Below are positions 1 through 56,433 of a stretch of 64,000 nucleotides of DNA, piece by piece (the stretch's first letter is position 1; each line of letters opens with the position of its first letter). The translations under genes and the position numbers were made by a program. This stretch comes from Auanema rhodensis. Taxonomy: Eukaryota > Animalia > Nematoda. Below the pieces are notes generated by a model. The model worked only from the letters and a program-made list of their open reading frames with translations. It did no database searches and had not been told where the DNA came from. The stretch is from the NCBI GenBank assembly GCA_964057225.1, contig OZ059895.1:8122001-8186000 (forward strand), written 5' to 3'.

Positions 1-179
1 ACCAAGATTTACATATTTCTCATTTCGTGTATCTAATATTTATTAAAAAATAGCTCAGTAATACTCTTCTGTTCTCTAATAGTTGCCTTGATAAATAACT
101 TTATTTTTTATTTTTGTCAATAATTGTTTCTGATCCTCAAGATTTGTATGGTTTTCATTCAGTTTCAGGTTTTAAATCA

Positions 180-1515
180 ATGATATTGGATATCAAGCTA
201 CATGCTCTTTCTAACACAACGGCAATTGAGTTTCTAAATATAGCTGAAGTTCTGATTCTACTCATTGCTATGTTTTGCCTGTGTATATGTTTACGCGTAT
301 TCTTTATCAGTCCTCAATTTCATGTGCACCTAATAGCACTTTTGGTGCACACAGCATTTCTTGGTTTGAATATTAATTGCTTATTTATAAATATGAACTA
401 TCTTAGCATATACAATACATGTAAACCGTATTCTAATGATTATATTGAGTATAATAACTCCTTATACAGGTAATCTCATTTATAAAATTTTTAAAAGAGC
501 AGCAGATGCGTATTAGAGCTGGCAAGAAGAATTAATAATCGAGTATTAAACTTCAATTAACTTTAGATCCAAAAACTGAACCCATATTGTATTCAATAAA
601 GCGGCTCGCCGAGTTTTTACATTTTTCTTCATGTGTCTGTATAATGGGAAACTTGCCCGTATTGATAGGTTGCTTTTATTTATAAAAAGATGTGAAATAT
701 AATGTAAAATTAAGGAGAAAGATTGATTGCCACTATTTGGCTTTCGAACTATGAAAATCATCGAAACTTCTTATGCATTTTCATTGTAATTATTTTGCAA
801 TATGGAATTAGTTTCTGTATGACCTGGGCCATGTATGTGAAAATAGTTCCTATTCTTCCTGCAATAGGATTTGGCTTATTTTTAACAGTTGTATCTGTCG
901 CATTATTCAAAATATTACATAGGTAAATACATATAGACCCTCAAAAGTAACAGATATTTTGCCAATAGAATAAATCAACATCGTTATAAAAAATCTAAAT
1001 TCATTGGAACTACTTATACATTAAGTGAACGCTATCAGCTAGCTGAAAATATACGAACAGCTGGAATAATGAAAAAATGTTGTTTCTTAGGTTCCGCATT
1101 CAATTGCTTTGGAGCATTGGTTAGTCACTCTCACCTGGCTTCATAAAGATATATTCAGATTTTGGCAGCTTTTTATTCATTTCGAGATCATGAAATAACG
1201 CCGCATGTGCTTTATGTACTGTTCAACTTATTTGTAATAGTTTATACTATTCTATTTTTGTTAATGGGAATGTTCAGCCATCAAATTTGGAAAGAAAATT
1301 TTGTAGCGTAAGTGAAAGCAACAAATTTTTGAATTATATAACATTAAACTTGAAAAATTCTCAGGATTATTAAACGTATAGTTAGATGTAAAAATCTTGG
1401 CAGGAATGCAAGTGGAACAGCAGAGTTGAAGAATACTGATGGGTCCCGGATGTCATTCAGTATAGATGAACAACGACAGTATTACTTTAATTCTCTTAGC
1501 ACTTCTTGGAATTAG
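180..1515 (+). CDS. Serpentine chemoreceptor, Sre-like class (multi-exon)
   Basis: TTTCAG at 163-168 precedes the ATG at 180. Spliced product has about 7 hydrophobic segments, 'PQFHVHL', 'GERLIATIWLSNYEN', 'YTLSERYQLAENIR' and C-terminal 'YYFNSLSTSWN*' (TAG 1513-1515), motifs typical of Sre receptors. Confidence 0.8.
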
Positions 1516-1636
1516 TTTTTCATTTATTTTTGTTATTTACAATTGAAGAAGTATATATATATATATATAGATATATAGATCTGCAACAAATAGAATCAAC
1601 AAAAAAATATCGTATAATCTGTAAAAAAATATTCAA

Positions 1637-3313
1637 TCAATGTTGAGTCCATTTGATACTGTTCAAATCAATTCCTTCTTGCACCATCTCCCATAATGGG
1701 CTGAGTTCTCGAAGTCGTTCTGTTTCTTTTACACAAAGGTCAATGGTATGTTGAATCTGAAGGAAAAAAATTGTTTGTGCAAAGAACAAGAAGTGAACTT
1801 CGGCTTCAGTGGTAAATCTTCCAATTCCAAATCGAATTGATGAGTGAGCAAGATCTTCTCCTGTACCAATAGCACGAAGAACATACGATGGCTCTAATGA
1901 TGCAGAAGTACAAGCACTTCCTGATGAAAGTGCAATAGATTTTAAAGCCATTAACAAAGACTCTCCTGAAAATAAAAATACTATCATGTGAAAATAGTTA
2001 TAAAGAAACCTTCAACGTAAGCAAATGAAAGATTAACACATCCTGGATAAGATTTGTTAGCATCGCCATTTCTAATAATATTTCCGAGCTTGCTTTGAAT
2101 TCCTTCAATCAGCATCTTCGAAAGTCTCTGAATATGAGCCGAATCCATCTCTAAATTTTAATGTAGATTTAAACTACCGATATTAATTACGCATTTCATC
2201 CTTAGCAATTTTGCACGCTTCACCCATACCAACACAGAGAAAGGCTGGAACAGTACCCGAGCGTATCCCTCTTTCTTGTCCACCACCACTCATTTGAGCC
2301 TCGAGGCGAACACGAGGTCTTCTACGAACATAAATAGCTCCAATTCCTAAAAGCTGGAAATTTAAGTGAACAACAAAGCATTAATAACCTTTGGGGCCAT
2401 AAAGCTTGTGCCCTGAAATAGACATCAAATCTACTTTCATTGCATTAACATCCATAGGAATCTTTCCTACAGCTTGGGCAGCATCAGTATGAAAATGAAT
2501 CTTTTTAGAACGACAAAGCTCTCCTAAAAACCTCAAATATAACATCTTAATTGCTAAAATTCTAACCCAACTCTGCGATTGGTTGTACTACTCCTATTTC
2601 ATTATTCACCGACATAATGGAAACAAGACATGTCTCTGGTGTGATCGCAGCCTCGAGATCCTCAAAAAATATTTTTATTCAGAACTAAAACGATAACACA
2701 CCTTCATGTTAATTAGACCTCCTTCGTTTACTGGCAAATAAGTAACTTTAAATCCTTCAGATTCTAAAGCACGACATGAATCTAACACGCACTTGTGTTC
2801 CTGAAGTTTAAAACATAAGCTGATTTTTTTCATATTAATAATATACTGTTTGACACGTAATAATGTGATTTTTTCCAGTGTGTTTCTTAAATTTGGCAAC
2901 ACCTTTAATAGCTATGTTATTCGCTTCTGTAGCACCTGATGTGAAAATAATTTCTCTTGGATCAGCCTATAATCATATTTGCAACGTAAAATGTTTTCAA
3001 ATAGCCACACATTTATCAATGAAGCAATATGCTCCCTGGCTGTTTCCACAGCTGTTTCAGCTTTCCAGCCATAGACATGAGTTCTGGAATGTGGGTTACC
3101 GAAATCATTTACCATATAAGGCAACATGGCATCCACGACTCGTGGGTCCTATAACCATTATTAAAAAATATAGCTAAACCGTTCTATACGAACCATTGGT
3201 GACGTAGCTTGAACATCTAAATAAATAGGAGAAGCCTGCTTTGGGTCAACCTTTTGAGTGGCAAAAGCCCTTCTCGTAAGAGAAAAAAGGTCCAAGCCTC
3301 TTCTCGCAAACAT
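1637..3313 (-). CDS. nfs-1: Mitochondrial cysteine desulfurase NFS1
   Basis: Presequence-like '[18 protein letters not shown]', then '[10 protein letters not shown]', 'FGNPHSRTH', PLP lysine '[12 protein letters not shown]', catalytic '[17 protein letters not shown]' and C-terminus 'IKWTQH*'. Confidence 0.97.
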
Positions 3314-3871
3314 CTAATAAGGTCGTGATTAATTGCATATTTCTTAAATGCTTTAGAGATGACAGGATGATGACCAAGCTTAAAAAACACAATAGCTTAG
3401 TTTTAATATTTATAAGTCATGAAAACATTTTCGGAGGTTACTATCAGCACAGGAAGGATACAACGTTATCACGAACATGGCTACGTAATAGTTTAAGAAA
3501 AATTACAAGAAAACAGGACGTCTTTTCTTCAACGGTTAATGAATGACAATAAAATAACGAAAATGATCTCGGTAACGAAAACTATGAAGTTTATACAATG
3601 ACCAAGAGCATGTAACGAATGAAGACGTGCTTATCGGTGAACAAACGTAACAAATTAGATAGACACAGAACCGATTATACTTATTTTACTGAGCATCTGG
3701 CCTGCTATATAAAGAAACATGCTAACATCTCTTACTCATAAGAGTACATCGGAAGCTATAGCTTTAAATATGAACAGGGAATACAGCAAAAGCCTCGTCA
3801 GCATATGGTATTATAAATATAGCTTAAAACAGAATTAAAGAAGATTCTCTAATTGCTAACCGGTGTCTACC

Positions 3872-5385
3872 TTATGCTGATGCAAGTTTCACATCTTCTT
3901 TATTATAATCAGGAGACATGGAATGACTGTTAACCAGCCTAGCTTGTTCCACAACGGGATGGAAGTAAGGATGCTCCATAGCTTCACGAGCCGTTAAACG
4001 TTCCTAAACAAATATAAATTCTTAACCGGTTTCCTAAAATATACATACTTGATGATCATAACGTAAGAGTCTATCCAAGAAATCTAATGCCTCAGGGGAG
4101 ATAAGATGTTGGTTTTCGGCATGAATAAACCTAAAAAATGATGATTATTCATGTATATTTGTTATTTGCCGACCTTTCCCATCTCTTTTTGGAATGTCTT
4201 CCCAAAATGTCATTGAACCGAGGATCTAATTCAATGTGGTATTTCTCAATGTATTCGAACAATTCTTCAGTTCCAAGAACCTTTGCAATTCGTACCAACT
4301 ATAGAAATCAATTAATAAGTTAATCAACATTAATATTTTTTACCTGATCGTAATTGTCATGTCCATGGAAGAAAGGTTCTTTTCTGAAGATCATACTGGC
4401 GAGCATACAACCCAAACTCCACATATCAAGAGAATAATCATAGCATTGATAATCAACAAGCAATTCCGGACCCTGTTGAAATAAAAAACACATTAATTTG
4501 AATACTAAACTAATATACCTTGAAATATCTGGAAGCAACCCGTACATTGTAGTCCTGCTTGGGATGATAAAACTCAGCCAAACCCCAATCAATAAGACGT
4601 AACTGAACAATAATTCAAATAAATTAATATTAAAAAAATTAAAAAATTACTTCTCTTTTTTCATGATCAATCATTACATTGTGTGGCTTAACATCTCTGT
4701 GCATGATACCTTGTGAGTGGCAGAAGTCAAGGGCCTTAAAGAGATAATACTAAATGCTACTATTTATTTTCCAACTTACTTTCAAAAGCTCGTACAAGTA
4801 ATAACGAATGTCAAAATCGCTAAGAGTTTGATATAAGTGCTTGAAATCAGAGTTATTTACATATCTAAAAAAAAAACTAAACTTAAGAATAAAAGAAATT
4901 TGCAAACTCGAAAATGAGAGCAGGGGTTCTAGATACGGGGTCTTTTACTACATCTAATAATGTAATAATATTTGTACCACCCCTTAAATTCTCCAAAATT
5001 TTAATTTCCCTCTTAATCTTCTTTTTTTTGACTGGCTTAAATAAATTAAATATGAAAAATTTAAATAATCTATAACTTATTCACCTTAAGAATCTTAACT
5101 ACAACCTTTTCATCAGTTGTCACCTTGATTCCTTCAAAGACCTTAAAATTAATAAAAATTTCATCCCTTCAGAAGAGTTTAGAATTACCTCAGAGTATTT
5201 TCCACGACCCAGTTTTCTAACTAACTGATAATCATCGATACATCCCCAATCAATTACATGACACTCATAATCCCAGTATTCACGAGGCTTATTCGGATTC
5301 ACCTATGTAAAATGTAATATATTTTTTTACAGAAAATGCTGCTTACATCAGGGTACACCCTAGATTTACTGGAAACTGGAGCCAT
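3872..5385 (-). CDS. kin-3: Casein kinase II catalytic alpha subunit
   Basis: 'SKSRVYPDV', 'REYWDYE', '[10 protein letters not shown]', '[15 protein letters not shown]', '[12 protein letters not shown]', '[10 protein letters not shown]', '[13 protein letters not shown]'. ATG at 5385, TAA at 3872-3874. Confidence 0.97.
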
Positions 5386-5657
5386 ACTAGAAGCCAATAC
5401 CAAGTAAGAGGTATCTAAAAACCAATAAATAAAAAAAATATTTGAAAAATAAAGCTTAAATAGATTAAAATTCTCACGGAAACAACGACACACCTAGAAA
5501 TTCGTGTTACCGTACAATGTTCCGTGCGAGACAATATTTAAAATTTAAAAACCTAGTCCTTTACTCATTGTCATCTAGTTCTTCTAACACAAGTATTTAT
5601 TCTAAATACAAATAATTTATTATAATTTTTATGCCCTTTTAATGTATTATTTTAAAG

Positions 5658-6827
5658 ATGCTGGGTTCTAGCAGATGGCGAGAAACCATAGGGCTCTGCT
5701 CTGCTGTTAGAGCCTGCCAAGCCAGTTGCAGTTCTAAGCGTGTATGATTAAGCTATTTAATTTTTTTCTGTTTACCATACTATCTCAGAACACTTGGGTA
5801 TTAAGAAGAGTCTATGCTCCCGAACCTACTCCTCCTGGAGGTATTCAACGTAATCCTAGAGAATTGCCCGACCTTCAAAAGCTTGAAGTTGTTGAGTTTG
5901 AAACAAAGAAAGCTGCTGGACCCATTCGACTAATTCTTCTTGAAGATATTGAAGGTAATTTACAGTTAAATTTAAGCAGCCTTTGTTTTTTTTGAGGTAT
6001 TGGCCATCAGTTTGATGTTGTTGAAGTTGATCGTAAAAAAGCTCGTACCGATTTACTTTTGTCTAGAAAAGCCGTTTATGCATCTCCTTTCGATCTTGAG
6101 TACTATGCGAAGATGAAAGAAGTATTTAGCTAAAATTGTTCAATGTTTTTTATTTTATTTTAGAAAATGGCTGATGAATTAGCTTCTCGTGTTCGCATTC
6201 CTTTTGAGCTTCTCAGTGTAGGAAGACAATTGCAGAAGCTCGTGGTTCCTATTAAGGTATTGTTAAATATTTAAAATTTATTTTCTTATCAATATCAAAC
6301 TTATTTAAGGTAAGCATGGACAATAAGTGGACAGTAGATCAAAGAATTCTTAAGACGTCACTTCGGCAAGTTGTAAGTTGATTCGTAATTAGTTTGTTTC
6401 AATCAAATTTACCAGGGAGTTGATATTGTTGATGATGCTATTTTCCTGTCCGATCAAGTTATTTCTGGCCCTAACTTCGAATTAGAATCCATGCTTATCA
6501 GATTTTATATAGTGGTAGGTATTAGCCGATTTGATTACTGCATGTTTGTTTGATCTAGATTGAGAAGCAATATATTGTTCCCATGATTGGACGATTGGCT
6601 CATATATCTGTTGATGAATCAAAACAGGTAAGTGGTTTTATACAGAAAAATTGGGCCTATTTTTTTTTATTTAGATTTTATCCCCCCAGGGAAGCAAAAT
6701 GCCATCACCTTCGGATTTGTTGAAATATGGAATCCAACCGGAGGAACCTTATTATTCCAAATCACCCGAATTTGATAATAATTACCCCGTGTTTGATTTT
6801 ATGCAAACTAGATTAAGATCCAAATAG
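5658..6827 (+). CDS. mrpl-9: Mitochondrial ribosomal protein L9 (bL9m)
   Basis: Presequence, then 'TWVLRRVYAP' and the bL9 N-domain 'IRLILLEDIEGIGHQFDVVEV..ARTDLLLSRKAVYASP'. TAG at 6825-6827. Confidence 0.9.
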
Positions 6828-7000
6828 AGTAGTAGAATTTTGTGTACATAGGTTGTTTCAGTTGTTTTATTTTTTGTTAATGTTAAGAATAACTTTAAGA
6901 TTTTTTTTAATGTTTTGAAAGGTTATAACACCCTTCAAATTCTTTTCATATTTTTTTGTTTGAGTAATATTTTTCTTTCATTCTTTCAGTATCTGAAAAA

Positions 7001-8327
7001 ATGGTTTTGGAAAGTACTATGATTTGGTGAGTAGATGCATAGTACTCTACGTTATACTTTTATTGCAGCGTTGATAACTCCGAATGGATGAGAAACGGAG
7101 ATTTTGTTCCTACTCGTCTACAATGCCAACAGGATGCTGCAAATCTTGTTATGAACTGTAAGCTTCGCGCTAACCCAGAGAATGCTGTTGGTCTGTTATC
7201 TATGGCAAAGTAACTTTTCTTTTTTGTGTTAAAAATAATCTTTTTTTATTAGTGGTGTTCATGTATTATCTACTATGACTCAAGAAAATTCACGTTTATA
7301 CATGAAACTTCATCAGCTCGAACCAATGGTGTGTTGAAATCTATCTAATAGAGTATTAAATAATATTTTAAGGGCAAATGCAATTTTTTAGCTTCCATCA
7401 AGGTTGCGCATCTGGCTCTGAAACACAGACAAAATAGAAGTCATCGTATGCGAGTGGTTCTTTTCATTGGGAGCCCCATCGATGGGCTTGACACTAACGA
7501 GGTATGATGATTATTCACCTTCAATTTACATACTGATTTGTTTTTTTAAGCTTACAAGATTGGCTAAAAAATTCAAGAAGGAAAAAGTTGATTGTGATGT
7601 CGTATGCTTTGGTGAGACTGACTCTGAAAACAGCAAACTTATGGGGCAATTTATTGATACTTTAAACGGAAAGTAGGATTAAAATAATTCATTAAAATAT
7701 CATTAATATACTTAAAGGGATGGCACTGGTTCCAACCTTGTTGTCGTTTCTTCCGGTTCAACCCTTACCGATGCACTCTTAAACTCTCCTATTTGTCGTG
7801 GAGAAGATGGAGGAAGCGCTAATATTGGCGGAGGCGGATATGAATTCGGCGTTGATCCTGACGAGGATCCTGATCTTGCTTTAGCTCTTAGAGTTTCGAT
7901 GGAAGAAGAGAGAGCACGTCAAGCAGCTGTGGCCGCTGCAGCCGCAGCTGCTGATGGTGCTTCTGAATCCGCACCGTTACCAGCTGTACAAGAATCTGAT
8001 GTAATGGATATCGATATGGGTGCTATGACAGAAGAGCAACAATTAGAATGGGCTCTTCGAATGTCTATGCAACCAAATGACCAAGGTTAATCAAATGATA
8101 TTTCAAATATAACCTTAGTTTTATAGCTCAAGCAGAAACAACCTCTGCACCAGCTGAAGTTAATGTTCAAGATAATCTGGATGAATTAATGGAAAATCCA
8201 GAATTGCTTCAACAAATTGTAAATGAATTGCCTACTGCAAATGATAAGGTAAGATCATTAAGATCCTTAATAAAGTGATGTCAATGTATTATAGAAGGAT
8301 TCCGATAAATCTGCGGAGGACAAATAA
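7001..8327 (+). CDS. rpn-10: 26S proteasome ubiquitin receptor Rpn10/PSMD4
   Basis: vWA start '[26 protein letters not shown]'; UIM1 '[14 protein letters not shown]'; UIM2 '[13 protein letters not shown]'. Confidence 0.97.
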
Positions 8328-8456
8328 GGTGCAAGTTGTATACTAACCGATGGTTCCTTATTTATTTTCTTTCTGTAAACTATAAAATAAACATTTCACG
8401 AGTATAAATGAAATAATTTGATTGCAAAATAACAAAGCTATCACAATTCTTTCTAT

Positions 8457-8649
8457 TTAGTCTTTCTTGTATTGCTTCAAATAGTTTTCTATTTTCGCAG
8501 ACAGTTCTGTGGTTGACGGAACAGGAGGAAGCTAAAAAATTGACCAGTTTGAAAATAATTTTCTAAGTTCTAACCTCGTAGTTTTGACAAGCGTACACTC
8601 CGGCATAAGTACCAATGGCGAAAGAAATAATATGAGATAAGAGTCCCAT
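8457..8649 (-). CDS. STMP1: Short transmembrane mitochondrial protein 1 (STMP1/Mm47-like) micropeptide, 49 aa
   Basis: Two 75-nt exons (8575-8649, 8457-8531) around a 43-nt GT-AG intron give MGLLSHIISFAIGTYAGVYACQNYELPPVPSTTELSAKIENYLKQYKKD, matching the STMP1 pattern 'F.xG...GxYxxQNYxxP'. Below the ORF-track length cutoff. Confidence 0.85.
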
Positions 8650-8769
8650 TAATGCCTAATCAAAGCATGAAAATCTCAAACATAAAAAATGACAATATAT
8701 TGATGGTAATCCAGCTTTAATGAAACAGTATTTTATTCATTCTTTACTTTTCCGTGCAATATACAAAGA

Positions 8770-10887
8770 TTATTTTTTAAGCGAAAACAAATTTTCATCT
8801 AAACGACGTCTTTCTAATTTACAACGATCAACCCAAAACGATGAGACAATGTGTACAGAAGAACCTGCAAAACAATAAAAAAAACCTTTTCACCTTAAAA
8901 CCAACCTGCTTTACGAGCTTTTGGTGTGTTTCTAAACGCTGAGATAATATGAGTTACAGAAGGTGTTACATCATTGGCATATGTCGCACCAAGCGATAAA
9001 GCCTTAAAAAAACAGTATTAATAACTTTGCTCTTTTTTTTGTGTCATGTTATTTAACTAACTTTATCACGAAGGTTAGTTCTTTCAGGGTTTTGAAATCC
9101 ACTTAATGTGAAAACTACACCTTGTAAAGGAGCTGTTATCTGCAGTAATACAAAATAAAAAATATATATCATAGTTGCTCACATTAGGTAGGTAAGAATT
9201 AGGCTTATTCACAGTTTTTCCTAGAGGTGACTTGGTCTGACTACTAGGAGCTGAAAATTTATATAATTTATTGTTCGAACCCGTTTACTTACTTTTTGGA
9301 GTATTTTTGTCATCTGATTTAAAAGTATGTTTACCTAGACAATAAATAATAAAAACATGAATTTTTTTAAAACTCACTTCTTTTAGCACCATTCTGAGCC
9401 GATGATGGTGATGTTTCTAAAGAGGATCGCTTGAAGCTATGATTTGTTTGAGATGGTGTTCGTTGTGGAAATGAAGAACTATCTGATGTAGATGGCAGAC
9501 AATCTAAATTATACAAAAATTTCATTAGCACATTGGTTTGCTCTAACTGAACCTAATGATGATTCATTCACATTATCTGAGACAGTAATGTCATCAAAAC
9601 TGTCATCGCACTTATTTTCTGTAAGTAGAAAATTTATAGAAATGTTTCTAGCTCACTCGAACCAGTCGGTGAATCTTCACGTTTAGAGTCAGTATTGTGA
9701 CTAACAATGAGACTATTATCCAGAGAATTATTGTTAGTGGAACCAAACTCCAAGCCAATTTCGTCCTTGAGCAGCCTAGTTAAGAACGTTCCTAAAACTC
9801 GAATATAAATCTCATTTCAATAACCGCACCTACCGTTAGTTGAAGTTGTGTGTTTTGGAGTAGCTGGAGGCATATTCATTGCTTGTGAGTTGTTCTTGTT
9901 GCAGAGTATACTTTTCTCTCTTTCGGCCTTCAACATTTTCCATTGAGCTAATCTATCTTTCTTTTTATCATTAACATTGCTGGAGCCCCGAACACGACCT
10001 TTGCTGTCAAGTAAAAGAGGATCAGATACATTAGGCAATTCAATTTTAGGTGTGCTCTAGGATGAAATATATAAATATAAAGTTATATTAAAAAATATAT
10101 ACCAATGTTGTGATTGAACTCTTACGCATTTGTTCTTCCTTCTCTATCAAATCCTCTATCTCATCAAAGTATGTTCTAGGTTTTATAACTTTTTCCTTAG
10201 CTAAAAAACTTCTCAAATAAAATAGAAATTAAAATTTTTTTTCACTTCTCTGTGTAGTATCAATGCTCGGAATCACGCAACCTAACGGGGTAAGCGTCAC
10301 ACTAGAATCAAAATCATCTATACCACCAATTACAGTTATAAAAGATATTCCATAAGGAATTTTTTTATTAAAAGGTTGCCTACAAACAATCTAAGAAAAA
10401 TATATAACTAAATTTTTGAGAAACCTTTACTAAATCCCACTTCTGGGTTTGAGCAGCAGGATAAAAATCGGTCTTGCTGTATCTATGAACTTTATTACCA
10501 TTTTTTTCTTTACGCGAATCTCCAGGTTCCATTAACGCGACATCGTGCAATAACGTCTATAAGATGAAAATATTGGTACTATGGCGAACGAACATTTGTA
10601 CCACATATTCTGGATTATCATAACAAGATTTGGCAACTAATACTTCAATAAAAGCACTAAATTCATTTCCTACATCAATATAAGTTATAATATCTTCTTT
10701 AGAAAGTTTCAAAATGACTACGTTAGAATTTTTTCCTGAATTTGAATTGATTTTAATTTGAACATAATTCACCACCTGCTTTTCCTTTAAATGATCTACT
10801 TTTTCTTGTATCCAGCAAATTCGAAGCTTCAAACCATTCATGAGCTTCAGACGAAGAAACTACTTGAGTGAATTTTAATTGCGGCAT
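8770..10887 (-). CDS. XRCC1: XRCC1 single-strand-break repair scaffold (N-terminal domain + one BRCT)
   Basis: NTD 'MPQLKFTQVVSSS..ASNLL', 'VVILKLSKEDIITYIDVGNEFSAFIEVLV', 'WDLVKIVCRQPFNKKIPYGISFITV'; BRCT 'LQGVVFTLSGFQNPERTNLRDKALSLGATY..VTHIISAFRNTPK..WVDRC'. TAA at 8770-8772. Confidence 0.9.
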
Positions 10888-11086
10888 TGTTAATTATATT
10901 AATTGAATACCAACATCAGTTAGCTTTACTATTTTCTCAAATCACCGTTTGATAAAAAATATTTTGTACGTGATTACGTATGCTTCGAAATGAAAATGTA
11001 TACAATCTGTGTGAAATCACAATTCATATGTTATGTTACTTCATGAAATTCTTAATTGTAATTTTAATGCTAATTTTTATTACAGA

Positions 11087-11753
11087 ATGAGTGAATCCAA
11101 AGAAGAATCGCCTATTTCTGACAGTTTGAAAGCTCTTGAAGAACTTTTTAAAGATAGATATTCATCGGTATACTCTTATATATGTATATATTATAATTTT
11201 TGGTAATATCCTTTTAAGAATGATCCTGCGTATTGCCAAATACAGAGAGGTTTTGATGATCCTATACTTGTTCATCCTTGGAATGCTCAACCTAAGCGTG
11301 TTTTCGACTACACTCGTAACCGGGGAAGAGGACGGTAATCTTACAAGTTAAGCAGTATATTGTAATGTACTTTTCAGTGGATACTCCAATCATAATCAGA
11401 ACCGAAATTTTTATGATCACGCTGCAAGAAAGAGAAAAGCCGATTATAATTATGACAACTCTCAACGGTTCCCCAATGATAGGCAAGATGGAGAAAGAAG
11501 AGGCTACCACAATGATAGACAAGGTGGAGCAAGAAGAGGCTACCACAATGATAGGCAAAATGGAGATCGAAGAGCCTACCCCAATGATAGGCAAGATGGA
11601 GAACGAAGAGTCTACCACAATAATAGGCAAGATGGAGAAAGAAGAAGCTTCCACAACGATAGACAAGATGGAGAAAGAAGAGGCTTCGAGGGTCAACAGA
11701 GAGGTGGCTCTCAATTCCACGGAAACAGCCGTACATTTTATCCTGGCCGATAG
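11087..11753 (+). CDS. RAMAC: RNMT-activating mini-protein (RAM/FAM103A1)-like, 190 aa
   Basis: Exons 11087-11167, 11219-11334 and 11378-11753 are in phase. N-terminal 'LEELFKDRYSSNDPAY..DDPILVHPWN' aligns with human RAM 'FEEMFASRFTENDKEY..ESPPIVEEWN', followed by an N/R/G/Y-rich tail. Confidence 0.75.
11475..11690 (+). repeat. Coding tandem repeat, 6 x 36 bp (consensus NDRQDGERRGYH)
   Basis: Unit aatgataggcaagatggagaaagaagaggctaccac repeated six times with substitutions inside RAM exon 3. Confidence 0.95.
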
Positions 11754-11895
11754 TAATATTTGATCTCATTATGTTATAACAATTGATAATTATCGATTAA
11801 ATAACTCCTTATCATATATATTTATAAACCAAGTTAAAAAGTTTCACAAAATATAGTACATAATAGATTGCAGAAGAGCAAGAAAAACCAAGATC

Positions 11896-12567
11896 TTAAT
11901 CTTCACACCATGCATTTTCCTTCCTGATCAAGTTTTCTTCATCGGGAGAGAAATCATTCTTAATATTGAAAGTTCTCCGAATTTCATCAGGACATTTTCC
12001 CTTAAAATGTCATTATTTAGTAGAACCAAAGTACAATGCAAACCCTGATCATTGAAGCAACTGTCTTGCATGCGGAATCCAAAAGACCTTTGATATCCAT
12101 ATAGTTAGCGGCCTAAAGAAAAACAAATATATATCACATCCTTATTTATTTTTAACCATGATAAGCTCGAATAAGGTTGCCTGATCTATTTTCAAAAAGG
12201 CAGCATCCCAGGCACAAATATCTTCAGCACCTCTCTCTTGTGGGTCAGTAGTTAATACCTCTCCTTTATGATATTCCATCCATTGAATAACCCAAAAAAG
12301 AAAAACTATAAAAAAACTAAAAAAAAAACTTACTTTTTTCAAAATACTGGTATTAACTTTAGGGAGAGGGATGTTTCTAGCTTCATTATCATCATCCAAA
12401 TCATCCAATTTCAAATCCTGTAACATGCAAATAAAATTATTTTAAAAAAAAACAATACCAACACTGATACAAGTGTCGAGTAAAGTGGAGAGCTTAGCAC
12501 ATTCCCGAGAAATGCGAAAGACGCCGCCATCACTTGTAGTCAATTTAATTGTTCTTTCAGTATTCAT
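11896..12567 (-). CDS. SKP1: SKP1-related (skr family) SCF adaptor
   Basis: '[11 protein letters not shown]', '[17 protein letters not shown]', '[30 protein letters not shown]', '[24 protein letters not shown]'. Confidence 0.93.
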
Positions 12568-53485: not shown

Positions 53486-56433
53486 ATGTCATCTATGGAT
53501 ATGTCTCCTCTGCCAGAGGACTATCCGCAAGCTATTAACTATCGATCTTTAGAAGAATTAGTTAATAATGATGATTTGGAAGATATAATAACTATTAAAA
53601 GATGGTGTGAAAAACTCCAACATGTGAGTGTACCAAAATGAAAACTTCAATGAAAATTATTTATTTTTAGTTCAAATTAGAAGGCACTGAAAGCACCTAC
53701 GAGCTACAAACATTGGTTAATGGCCTCAGGTTTTTTTTATGAATTTGAATTTATTTCTTATTATTTAAGTTTTAGTTATCTTATGAGTTATATGTTCACT
53801 GCTGCCGATGAGTTGAAAGAAGTAGCTGAACGAGAAACATCAGCAATGGCTGAAAGGGAAGATCAATGGGAAGAAGAGAAACAAGAACTTAAGGTAAAAC
53901 TCAATTATTTTTATATTTTTATATTTTTATTTTGTTAAGGAAGAACTGGAATCTTTAAGAGAGCGTATCACTTCAAGAGCTGATGCAGGAGAATCTAGTG
54001 AAGCTTTTCGGTATGTTTCATTATTTGTTTTTGAAAAAGGCATTGATGTTAAAACTAAATATTCCGTTTAAGTGACCAAATTAACAGCTTGAAAGAGGAA
54101 AATAGAGCTTTACAACAGTTGAATCGAGATCGTGACAGACAAATGGCTGATCAAAGTGATAGGTAAGTAAACGATTTCTCACATTATTCAGTTTATTCTA
54201 TATTCTCTTTGTTATGTTTTTCATAAATCAACTGCTTTTCCAGGTTTGAAGCCTTAGTTGCTCGGGTAGATGCATTAACTCGCGAACGAGACACTCTTAT
54301 TGATTACGTATGTTGATTTAGAATATAAATTTCTTAAGAATCATTTTAGAAAGCTCAATCAGAAGATACTATTAGTGAGTTACGTCGCCGAATTTTCGCA
54401 AAATCAGAAGAATCAACGAATGAATGGGAAACTAAAAAATTGAAACAACGAAATGAACAAGCTGTCACACTTAGTCGTCAAATGCAGGTAAAATTGAATT
54501 ACATATTGTATTTGTTATATAAACAAAAACTTTATTGTGTTTTAGAGTGTCGTAACACAAAATGAAGAATTACGATCAGAAGTCAGTAAAGTTAGTAATG
54601 CGTTAGAAGAAGCAACACGTCTGATTGAAGAAAGCTCAAAAAAGTAAGTTTGATTGAATGCAACCGGATAACATACAATAGAAATTCTCAAAATGAAATG
54701 AATCTGTCAATTCAACGTTATTACAGAATATCCGATCTCAAAGAAGAACTACAAGTAATGCAGGATCACGAAGCTGATTTGACGAATGAAAATGCTGTAT
54801 TACGAGAAAAATTAGAAGAACATACTTCTAAAACAGAACAATTAGAAAGCGAAGTTCTTGATTCTGAAATGGGAATGAAGGTTTAACTATTAGATTTAGT
54901 TTAATAATAATTAAAAATAATTTAGAAACTGATAAACCAACAGGAACAAACAATCAATGATCTGAAAGATGAGCTTGATCTTGCTGATGTAATTTTTATA
55001 TTTTATATAATTTTTCTTATTAAAAATCATAAATTATAGAGAGAATTAATAACTTTACGAGAACGAATAGCTAACGATATGAGCAAGCAAAAGGAAGATG
55101 AATTAGAAAAATTAAAAGATGAACTTGTTGAGGCTACAAAGTAAACATTCATATAATTCCTTTAAAGTTATAAATTTTTATCCAGAATGGCTCGAGAATT
55201 GTTTGGAGAACATGCTCAGAGTAAAGAACAAACAGATGATCCAACTGCCAACTTACGTATTCGTTTAGTTCAACTGGAACATAAGCTGCGGAAAGGATTG
55301 GAAAAGGTGATTGAGTAAAGAAATATTTGAATTATATTAATCGTTTAGAATGATGAGTTACAACGTAATCATCAAGAATTAGAAGATGAATTAGTGAAGA
55401 AAGATGAGAATCATGCTAATCTTGCAGCTGAAGTAGAACGTCTACGTGATGTGAGTTGAATTTACTTAAAACCATATTAATATTTTGTGGATTTCAGCTT
55501 AAATTTGGAGATGCTCGTGGGGAAGTCAACAGACTTGAATATCAATTAAAGCAACGTGACAATCAAATTAGTAAATTAACTAATTTCTGTACTATGCTTC
55601 AAATAGAACTTGGACGATATGCAGAACGTGAGGATCAACTCTCACAGTCTGATAACACGTCAACAACGAAAAACAAACAGAAACATGTTCAAAAGAAAGA
55701 AGAAGAACTACGTGAAGATAGTAAAACTACTAAAAAGGATGATAAAACTGTTTCTGTGATAGAAGATCATTCAGAAGTTGATGAATCAGAAGAAGCTTCT
55801 AAAACAAGTTCAAAAACAAAAGAAAAGCAAAAGAAATCTTCCATTAAATATAGTTCTGTATCAGATTTTGAGCATCAAGCAATGCTTGTATCTAGTCTTT
55901 ACTATGAAATAATGAAACTTATCGAGGTTAGACATGTTATATATTCAATTCTTATACAAATATTTTAAGGAGAATAATGAGAAAAATAGACAATTAGGTG
56001 AAATGGAATATTTATTAAAACAAAGAAAATCTGTTTCTGATATGAGTAAAGCACATGTTCAAGTATGTTCAAACTTTCTTTATTCAAAAGAAAACTGATT
56101 GAAATAAATGATTTTAGTTCGCGTATGAAGAAATTCGTCGACTTAAGGAACAATCAGAACTTGAAGTTTATGAGCATGAGCATGAATCATCATCATCACA
56201 AGAAGAACTTGAATTATCACGTATGGAGAATGAAGAATTAAAGGTTTTTTTGAATAATTTAATAATTATAATAGAATATTATTACTTCAGAGATTCCAAG
56301 AGTCTATACGTACAGGTGGAAATGAATTGGAAAGACGAGCAGAGGAAATGGCAAGAAAATTAATTTCTGAACGAATGCAGACAATTCGGTATATATTTAG
56401 AGTATATTTATCTATTTATCTAGCTATATATAC

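What the first reader, a model, noticed from the sequence alone, without database searches (positions are those of the whole stretch)
8770..10887. A nematode XRCC1 lacking the LIG3-binding BRCT2
Seen: an intact NTD, an S/T-P-rich linker, and a BRCT1 keeping the PAR-binding pocket equivalents (S in LSGFQN, R in PERT, K in NTPK) and the W..C motif, with a stop right after BRCT1. Established: C. elegans is reported to lack XRCC1, Pol beta and LIG3; the NTD binds Pol beta and BRCT2 binds LIG3. Inference: this is an intermediate in the dismantling of the PARP-XRCC1-LIG3 pathway, a PAR-recruited scaffold working with LIG1 or a new NTD partner. The human F67 position of the Pol-beta interface reads L here.
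Basis: partly seen in the sequence, partly recalled or inferred. Interest (0 to 1): 0.7.

Follow-up and report, generated by a model that had tools for sequence, protein, structure and literature searches.

The report
Two-domain XRCC1 repair scaffold in nematodes
This worm has an expressed gene for the DNA-break repair scaffold XRCC1 that stops after its second domain and so lacks the part that holds DNA ligase III; several other nematodes share this short form, although C. elegans has lost the gene entirely.

Summary
A 14-exon minus-strand gene (10887..8770) encodes a 514-aa XRCC1 orthologue. It has a complete XRCC1_N domain, a linker of about 270 residues (31% S+T+P) and one BRCT that matches human XRCC1 BRCT1. 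The PAR-pocket equivalents of S328, R335 and K369 are kept.

Spliced transcript contigs from four runs confirm all 13 introns. They end 18-60 nt past the TAA, with no joint to a further exon. No BRCT2-like sequence lies in the 64-kb window.

One detail is wrong: the human F67 position reads F here, not L. L occurs in the Auanema, Ascaris, Parascaris and Syphacia orthologues.

The architecture is not special to this worm. Auanema sp. JU1783 (syntenic), Ascaris suum, Parascaris, Toxocara, Syphacia, Gnathostoma and an unidentified transcript contig all encode NTD+BRCT1 proteins ending 5-10 residues after the conserved BRCT helix. They form one group in a tree (100/99). The short form therefore predates the split of these lineages, and Caenorhabditis later lost the gene.

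These proteins are in public databases, two named "DNA repair protein XRCC1", but I found no paper describing the architecture. I could not test whether LIG3 and Pol beta are absent genome-wide.

Most likely function: a PAR-recruited break-repair scaffold that works without a ligase III tether.

The parts
8770..10887 (-). Whole CDS of the XRCC1 orthologue: 14 exons, 1545 nt, 514 aa plus stop. Exons: 10887-10776, 10735-10602, 10556-10425, 10390-10246, 10200-10103, 10056-9834, 9791-9663, 9618-9553, 9503-9378, 9334-9293, 9250-9183, 9139-9062, 9002-8906, 8864-8770. Introns are 34-59 nt, all GT..AG.
   Evidence: Model from reading frames. All 13 joints are seen in spliced contigs of runs X1-X4, which also corrected intron 1 and intron 7. 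Length recomputed.
10331..10887 (-). XRCC1 N-terminal domain (exons 1-3 and the first 20 codons of exon 4)
   Evidence: Pfam PF01834 hits on four successive exons, collinear over profile positions 1-148. PDB hits to human XRCC1 NTD chains 3K77, 1XNA and 3K75.
9183..10330 (-). Linker of about 270 residues (rest of exon 4 to exon 11): S 14.7%, T 9.5%, P 7%, K+R 14%. No Pfam domain. Hardly alignable even to the Auanema orthologue.
8773..9139 (-). BRCT1-type BRCT domain (exons 12-14) with the S/R/K phosphate (PAR) pocket and the W..C motif
   Evidence: Exon 12 matches 2D8M residues 23-44 and exon 13 matches 45-73. Exon 14 weakly matches BRCT C-terminal helices. The three exons are 71-87% identical to residues 379-463 of P0001, whose BRCT passes the Pfam cutoff.
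8770..8772 (-). TAA stop codon, 10 residues after the conserved RRRL of the last BRCT1 helix
   Evidence: Seven nematode homologues end 5-10 residues after the same RLxE motif of that helix (tail listing).
8732..8737 (-). AATAAA poly(A) signal. Transcript contigs end at 8752 (X1) and 8710 (X2).
   Evidence: Sequence; contig ends

Best explanation
This is the orthologue of the single-strand-break repair scaffold XRCC1 in an Auanema-like rhabditid nematode. It has an old, nematode-wide two-domain form: N-terminal domain, long disordered linker, BRCT1, then the end of the protein.

Shown here:
- The gene is intact, spliced and transcribed.
- Both domains are complete.
- The three residues that form the poly(ADP-ribose)/phosphate pocket of human BRCT1 are kept.
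- Nothing follows BRCT1.
- The same form occurs in ascarid, oxyurid, gnathostomatid and rhabditid nematodes, and these sequences group together.

Inferred:
- The protein is brought to DNA breaks by PAR made by PARP enzymes, through BRCT1.
- It cannot tether DNA ligase III, because BRCT2 is missing.
- It cannot dock PNKP, APTX or APLF through the phospho-linker that lies between BRCT1 and BRCT2 in human XRCC1.
- Nick sealing would then fall to LIG1.
- The retained NTD would bind something other than Pol beta, or DNA itself, if these worms lack Pol beta as reported for nematodes.
- BRCT2 and the second linker were lost once, before the split of Spirurina and Rhabditina. Caenorhabditis later lost the whole gene.
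For: - Gene model and expression: 13 GT..AG joints in contigs of four runs, with transcript ends just past the stop.
- Domains: XRCC1_N over four exons. BRCT exons hit human XRCC1 BRCT1.
- Pocket residues S328, R335 and K369 are defined in PMC4538820. Their requirement for recruitment is shown in PMC6334254.
- No BRCT2: 130-residue C-termini of 11 canonical XRCC1 proteins give only chance tblastn hits in the window, L001 and L003. The full proteins do find the NTD and BRCT1 exons.
- Orthologues with the same architecture: P0001 Auanema sp. JU1783, P0005/P0012 Parascaris, P0011 Syphacia, P0017 Ascaris suum, P0018 Toxocara, P0026 Gnathostoma, and P0021, a 1828-nt unspliced mRNA contig with its own AATAAA.
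- Synteny with Auanema: Skp1, XRCC1, Rpn10, CK2-type kinase and NFS1 in the same order.
- Tree: the nematode sequences form one group, 100/99.
- BRCT1 is more conserved than the NTD, and both far more than the linker. That pattern indicates purifying selection on the two domains.
- Precedent that XRCC1-dependent repair does not need LIG3: the title of Simsek et al. 2011, cited.
Against: - No functional data exist for any nematode XRCC1.
- I could not test whether LIG3, Pol beta or other X-family polymerases, PNKP and APTX are present or absent in this genome. The published 'Pol beta not in nematodes' rests on a small 2011 KEGG sample.
- A free-standing BRCT2 gene elsewhere in the genome is not excluded.
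- The human DNA-binding pair at positions 399/400 of BRCT1 is not kept (N and L here, by my alignment to the human sequence from memory), and V86 reads T. Some canonical contacts may therefore differ.
- The transcript evidence is from assembled contigs, which can drop rare isoforms.
Confidence: 0.75

Rival explanations
1. Gene fission: BRCT2 and the second linker survive as a separate gene elsewhere in the genome and still bring LIG3 to the complex.
For: Another note on this genome reports that ALC1 is split into two genes, one read as Macro-BRCT (unchecked). So fission of repair genes may occur here. Only 64 kb of this genome was searched.
Against: There is no BRCT2-like sequence in the window, in 14 kb around the Auanema gene or in 29 kb around the Toxocara gene. 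The 201-aa gene downstream in Toxocara is not BRCT-like. Seven independent nematode models and transcripts end at the same place.
Confidence: 0.08
2. Truncation artefact: the real protein has BRCT2, and the stop reflects an assembly or annotation error or a minor isoform.
For: Automatic models of XRCC1 in other animals are sometimes cut short, for example the 510-aa Channa and 514-aa Artemia entries without BRCT2.
Against: Transcript contigs from four runs carry the in-frame TAA with no differing letters and end at a poly(A) signal. The next gene starts 120 nt downstream. An independent mRNA contig (L002) and the transcript-derived Ascaris entry end the same way.
Confidence: 0.03
3. Decaying relic: the gene is on its way to loss, as in Caenorhabditis, and no longer works in repair.
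For: Caenorhabditis lost it. Long branches for the rhabditid sequences. Minor aberrant isoforms: intron 1 retained in X1 and exon 2 skipped in X3.
Against: The reading frame is intact across 14 exons. The gene is expressed in all four runs. The NTD and BRCT1 are conserved while the linker has diverged beyond alignment. The pocket residues are kept. The architecture is stable across deeply split nematode lineages.
Confidence: 0.07
4. Repurposed scaffold: the protein keeps PAR or phospho-binding by BRCT1 but serves another pathway, for example replication-coupled nick processing or end joining with Pol theta, with the NTD bound to a nematode-specific partner.
For: Pol beta is reported absent from nematodes, and Pol theta contributes to BER gap filling in C. 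elegans. The F67 position varies between F and L among nematodes and V86 reads T. That fits relaxed Pol beta contacts.
Against: There is no direct evidence. The NTD as a whole is well conserved (111 bits summed against Pfam), which is also what a retained ancestral function would give.
Confidence: 0.2

Closest known systems
Human/vertebrate XRCC1 (NTD, BRCT1, BRCT2)
   Same: Complete XRCC1_N domain. BRCT1 with the S328/R335/K369 pocket and the W..C motif. A long S/T/P/K-rich linker between them. Same order of parts.
   Different: Ends right after BRCT1. It lacks the roughly 130-residue second linker, which in human XRCC1 carries the CK2 sites for the FHA domains of PNKP, APTX and APLF. It also lacks BRCT2, the LIG3 partner. 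V86 reads T. The 399/400 DNA-binding pair is not kept.
Nematode database entries: Ascaris suum F1L600 and Toxocara canis 'DNA repair protein XRCC1', and unnamed entries of Auanema sp. JU1783, Parascaris, Syphacia and Gnathostoma
   Same: Same two-domain architecture and same end point after BRCT1. One group in the tree. The Auanema gene lies in the same gene neighbourhood.
   Different: The linkers differ greatly in length (372-514 aa total) and sequence. This gene has F, not L, at the F67 position. None of these proteins has been studied, as far as my searches show.
Arabidopsis XRCC1 (BRCT1-only plant form)
   Same: A natural XRCC1 that lacks BRCT2 (domain scheme in PMC4538820, Figure 1A legend). 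From general knowledge, plants also lack LIG3.
   Different: From general knowledge, the plant protein also lacks the NTD. The nematode form keeps it.
Drosophila XRCC1
   Same: An ecdysozoan XRCC1 with an NTD in a species that KEGG lists without Pol beta (table in PMC6264785). An NTD without Pol beta therefore has a precedent.
   Different: From general knowledge, the fly protein keeps BRCT2. PMC4538820 Figure 1A compares the fly domains.

Membership tests
XRCC1 orthologous family | XRCC1_N domain (PF01834), which is specific to XRCC1 | tested here: met
   Four successive exons cover profile positions 1-148 collinearly, 111 bits summed. Three of the four are above the 21-bit cutoff on their own. 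PDB hits to human XRCC1 NTD.
XRCC1 orthologous family | Central BRCT1 with the phosphate/PAR pocket (human S328, R335, K369) | tested here: met
   Exons 12-13 align to 2D8M residues 23-73 with S, R and K identical. Residue identities taken from PMC4538820.
XRCC1 orthologous family | Descent: groups with XRCC1 of other animals, and shares a locus with a relative's XRCC1 | tested here: met
   Synteny with Auanema sp. JU1783. The nematode proteins form one group beside arthropod, tunicate and vertebrate XRCC1. The window's own joined protein was not put in the tree.
Canonical three-domain animal XRCC1 (LIG3 scaffold) | C-terminal BRCT2 (PF16589/PF16759) that pairs with the LIG3 BRCT | tested here: not met
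   TAA at 8772-8770 at the end of BRCT1. Transcript contigs end at 8752 and 8710. Only chance tblastn hits with 11 BRCT2 queries in the window and in two related loci.
Canonical three-domain animal XRCC1 (LIG3 scaffold) | Second linker with clustered CK2 sites that dock the FHA domains of PNKP, APTX and APLF | tested here: not met
   No residues follow BRCT1. Only scattered S/T-x-x-D/E sites occur in the first linker, for example in exon 8, and they are not conserved in P0001.
Canonical three-domain animal XRCC1 (LIG3 scaffold) | NTD binds Pol beta (human F67 and V86 are critical) | tested here: inconclusive
   The F67 position is F. By my alignment the V86 position is T. F67A and V86R abolish binding in human XRCC1. 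Pol beta is reported absent from nematodes. Binding itself is not testable here.
Plant-type XRCC1 (BRCT1 only) | Absence of the NTD | tested here: not met
   The NTD is present and complete.
Nematode two-domain XRCC1 (database entries, not described in papers found) | NTD plus BRCT1, with the protein ending 5-10 residues after the conserved RLxE motif of the last BRCT1 helix | tested here: met
   The C-terminal tails of seven nematode homologues stop at the same point. The last exon is 87% identical to the end of P0001.

The most novel reading that the evidence does not exclude
Rhabditid and spirurid nematodes have run, for hundreds of millions of years, a minimal XRCC1 made only of the Pol-beta-binding domain and the PAR-binding BRCT1, in genomes that have neither Pol beta nor LIG3. 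If so, the conserved NTD must have a second, ancestral function (DNA binding or an unknown partner). The core job of XRCC1 would then be PAR-dependent control of the break site rather than delivery of ligase and polymerase. Genetically tractable Auanema worms would be a natural separation-of-function system for this question.
Probability: 0.3. Interest if true: 0.6.

Novelty: new variant of a known kind. Interest (0 to 1): 0.42.

Why it matters
C. elegans, the reference nematode, has no XRCC1, and reviews ask what coordinates its single-strand-break repair. This gene shows that the loss is specific to the Caenorhabditis line. Other rhabditids and the ascarids keep a trimmed XRCC1 that retains PAR binding and the NTD but not the ligase III or FHA-partner modules. 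That is a natural experiment on which XRCC1 interactions are dispensable. It fits mammalian work showing that LIG3 is not needed for XRCC1-dependent nuclear repair. It also raises the question of what the NTD does where Pol beta is missing. The practical value is moderate: it is a database-visible but apparently undescribed architecture, not a new kind of system.

Tried and rejected
- Homologue searches were limited. A 44-aa exon found 11 hits in the representative library. Two profile searches were swamped by low-complexity linker words: only the 8000 candidates sharing most words were scored. No filarial, Strongyloides, Pristionchus, strongylid, clade I/II or outgroup (tardigrade, nematomorph) XRCC1 was recovered, and this says nothing about their absence.
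- Ten paper searches found no description of nematode XRCC1 architecture. Simsek & Jasin 2011 on LIG3 distribution and the 2019 helminth comparative genomics paper are not held.
- Findings look-ups for ligase, polymerase beta, BRCT, DNA repair and PARP gave no note on LIG3 or Pol beta in this genome. This is not evidence of absence.
- A tblastn hit of two BRCT2 queries at 53567-53620 (E = 0.016) was checked. It lies in a coiled-coil gene and is a chance match.
- The 201-aa gene downstream of Toxocara XRCC1 was checked as a possible split BRCT2. It is not BRCT-like.
- No structure was predicted. The joined model could not be submitted, and the domain calls were already clear.

Full report
**What is there**

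The window is AT-rich (32.6% G+C) and carries short-intron eukaryotic genes. On the minus strand from 10887 to 8770 I built a 14-exon model from the reading frames.

Contigs of four public runs were laid on 8300-11100. The runs are recorded as 'RNA?', but the contigs are spliced. They show 13 joints, all CT..AC on the plus strand, which is GT..AG on the gene's strand.
- Eleven joints match my model exactly.
- Two correct it: intron 1 is 10775-10736 (40 nt) and intron 7 is 9662-9619 (44 nt).
- The corrected CDS is 1545 nt, or 514 aa.

The transcript contigs start at 10924-10947. They end at 8752 (X1) and 8710 (X2), just past the TAA at 8772-8770 and around an AATAAA at 8737-8732. No joint leaves the last exon. 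Minor forms are seen: intron 1 retained in X1, and exon 2 skipped in X3, which shifts the frame. No letters differ from the window.

**Domains**

I searched exon by exon, by reference.
- Exons 1-4 hit Pfam XRCC1_N at profile positions 1-36, 41-81, 86-128 and 129-148 of 148 (20, 38.7, 28.2 and 24.7 bits). The N-terminal domain is therefore complete.
- Exon 2 hits the human XRCC1 NTD structures 3K77, 1XNA and 3K75.
- Exons 5-11 have no Pfam match. They form a linker of about 270 residues with S 14.7%, T 9.5%, P 7% and K+R 14%.
- Exon 12 has one PDB hit, human XRCC1 BRCT1 (2D8M residues 23-44). Exon 13 continues on residues 45-73 of the same chain.
- Exon 14 carries the W..C helix (FWVDRC) and weakly matches the last helix of other BRCT domains.
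- The three BRCT exons are 71-87% identical to the end of the Auanema protein P0001, whose BRCT passes the Pfam cutoff.

**Residues**

PMC4538820 names Ser328, Arg335 and Lys369 as the phosphate-binding pocket of BRCT1. Its mutagenic primers fix them in NPFRSEL and NTPKYSQ. The R335A/K369A mutant is not recruited to damage and does not rescue repair.

In the window the aligned residues are S (LSGFQN), R (NPERT) and K (NTPK).

The claim about F67 does not hold. One search aligns SAFIEVLV with human SAFVEVLV, so F67 is F here. L stands there in Auanema, Parascaris and Syphacia and in Ascaris. F stands there in Heterorhabditis and the insect Bemisia. F67A and V86R abolish Pol beta binding in human XRCC1.

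Three further points rest on my own alignment to the human sequence recalled from memory:
- V86 reads T.
- The redox cysteines C12 and C20 are absent.
- The DNA-binding pair at positions 399/400 reads N and L.

**No BRCT2**

- The C-terminal 130 residues of 11 canonical XRCC1 proteins give only chance tblastn matches in the 64-kb window. The best (E = 0.016, 18 residues) lies in a coiled-coil gene.
- The full-length proteins do find the NTD and BRCT1 exons.
- The next gene on the same strand starts 120 nt after the stop, with its ATG at 8649. It encodes a small membrane protein.
- Beyond that lies the 3' end of a convergent Rpn10/PSMD4-like gene.

**Relatives**

A search of the representative library with exon 2 found 11 proteins. 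Further searches added more.

| Protein | Organism or source | Length (aa) |
|---|---|---|
| P0001 | Auanema sp. JU1783 | 464 |
| P0005 / P0012 | Parascaris univalens | 419 / 438 |
| P0017 | Ascaris suum F1L600, 'DNA repair protein XRCC1' | 423 |
| P0018 | Toxocara canis, 'DNA repair protein XRCC1' | 419 |
| P0011 | Syphacia muris | 372 |
| P0026 | Gnathostoma spinigerum | 373 |
| P0021 | 1828-nt unspliced transcript contig of run SRR10133172, with its own AATAAA | 463 |

- Every protein in the table has XRCC1_N plus one BRCT and ends 5-10 residues after the conserved RLxE motif of the last BRCT helix.
- Heterorhabditis and Anisakis entries are fragments.
- Canonical three-domain proteins from an insect, a tunicate and vertebrates were found in the same searches.
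- In a maximum-likelihood tree of 18 proteins, the seven nematode sequences form one group (100/99). The two rhabditid sequences have long branches, so their placement inside that group is uncertain.
- The Auanema locus has the same neighbours in the same order as the window: Skp1, XRCC1, Rpn10, a CK2-type kinase and NFS1.

**Reading**

The two-domain form is old. It is shared by Spirurina (ascarids, Syphacia, Gnathostoma) and Rhabditina (Auanema and this worm). The simplest history is one loss of the second linker and BRCT2 before these lineages split, followed by loss of the whole gene in the line to Caenorhabditis.

XRCC1 is reported missing in C. elegans (PMC3969565; PMC7744777; KEGG table in PMC6264785). 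Between this worm and Auanema sp. JU1783, BRCT1 is 71-87% identical, the NTD about 57%, and the linker barely alignable. That is the pattern of two constrained domains joined by a free linker.

The likely mechanism is PAR-dependent recruitment through BRCT1, with no LIG3 tether and no FHA-partner docking. This is inferred, not shown.

Pol beta is reported absent from nematodes, on a small 2011 sample (PMC3258131). If that holds, the conserved NTD has another role. The fly, which KEGG lists without Pol beta but with XRCC1, is a precedent. Mammalian work cited (Simsek et al. 2011) shows that LIG3 is not needed for XRCC1-dependent repair, so a ligase-III-free XRCC1 is plausible.

**Limits**

- I could not survey this genome or nematode proteomes for LIG3, X-family polymerases, PNKP or APTX.
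- The findings index gave no such notes, which proves nothing. It does list unchecked leads that this worm keeps OGG1, an ALC1-like remodeler and a WGR-type PARP.
- My literature searches found no paper on nematode XRCC1 architecture, but the library does not hold most subscription journals.
- The transcript evidence is from assembled contigs, not raw reads.

- The joined 514-aa protein was never sent to a search, fold or tree.
- In one search a script joined the exons in memory only, to check frame and length. It saved only the length and printed only exon pieces.

**Verdict**

This is a real, expressed XRCC1 orthologue in a reduced two-domain form that is the norm in the nematodes sampled. 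It is visible in databases but, as far as I could find, undescribed. Interest is moderate.

Noticed in passing
window 8457-8649 (-): A two-exon gene for a 49-aa single-helix membrane protein (starts MGLLSHIISFAIG) begins 120 nt after the XRCC1 stop on the same strand, a spacing typical of nematode operons. From memory it looks like the mitochondrial microprotein STMP1. Its intron (8574-8532) is confirmed by contigs at about 7-10 times the contig depth of XRCC1.
   Followed up: partly
window 8300-8660: The transcript contig of the small minus-strand gene is fused with that of the convergent plus-strand Rpn10/PSMD4-like gene, which ends near 8326. Their 3' ends therefore overlap or abut.
   Followed up: no
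window 11088-11753 (+): The divergent upstream neighbour encodes a protein with about seven tandem 12-residue repeats of the type NDRQDGERRGYH, followed by an RGG-like tail. Auanema has an unnamed 302-aa gene at the same place.
   Followed up: no
window 10556-10776 and 10736-10775: Minor transcript forms of the XRCC1 gene: intron 1 retained in run X1, and exon 2 (134 nt) skipped in run X3. Both would break the frame.
   Followed up: partly
window 1-12500 versus L001: A gene-order block is conserved with Auanema sp. JU1783: NFS1, a CK2-type kinase, Rpn10, XRCC1, an unnamed gene and Skp1. The Auanema annotation lists no gene between XRCC1 and Rpn10, where this window has the small membrane-protein gene.
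   Followed up: partly
window 10902-10919 (-): A five-codon upstream ORF (ATG TTG GTA TTC AAT TAA) lies in the 5' leader, inside the transcript contigs.
   Followed up: no
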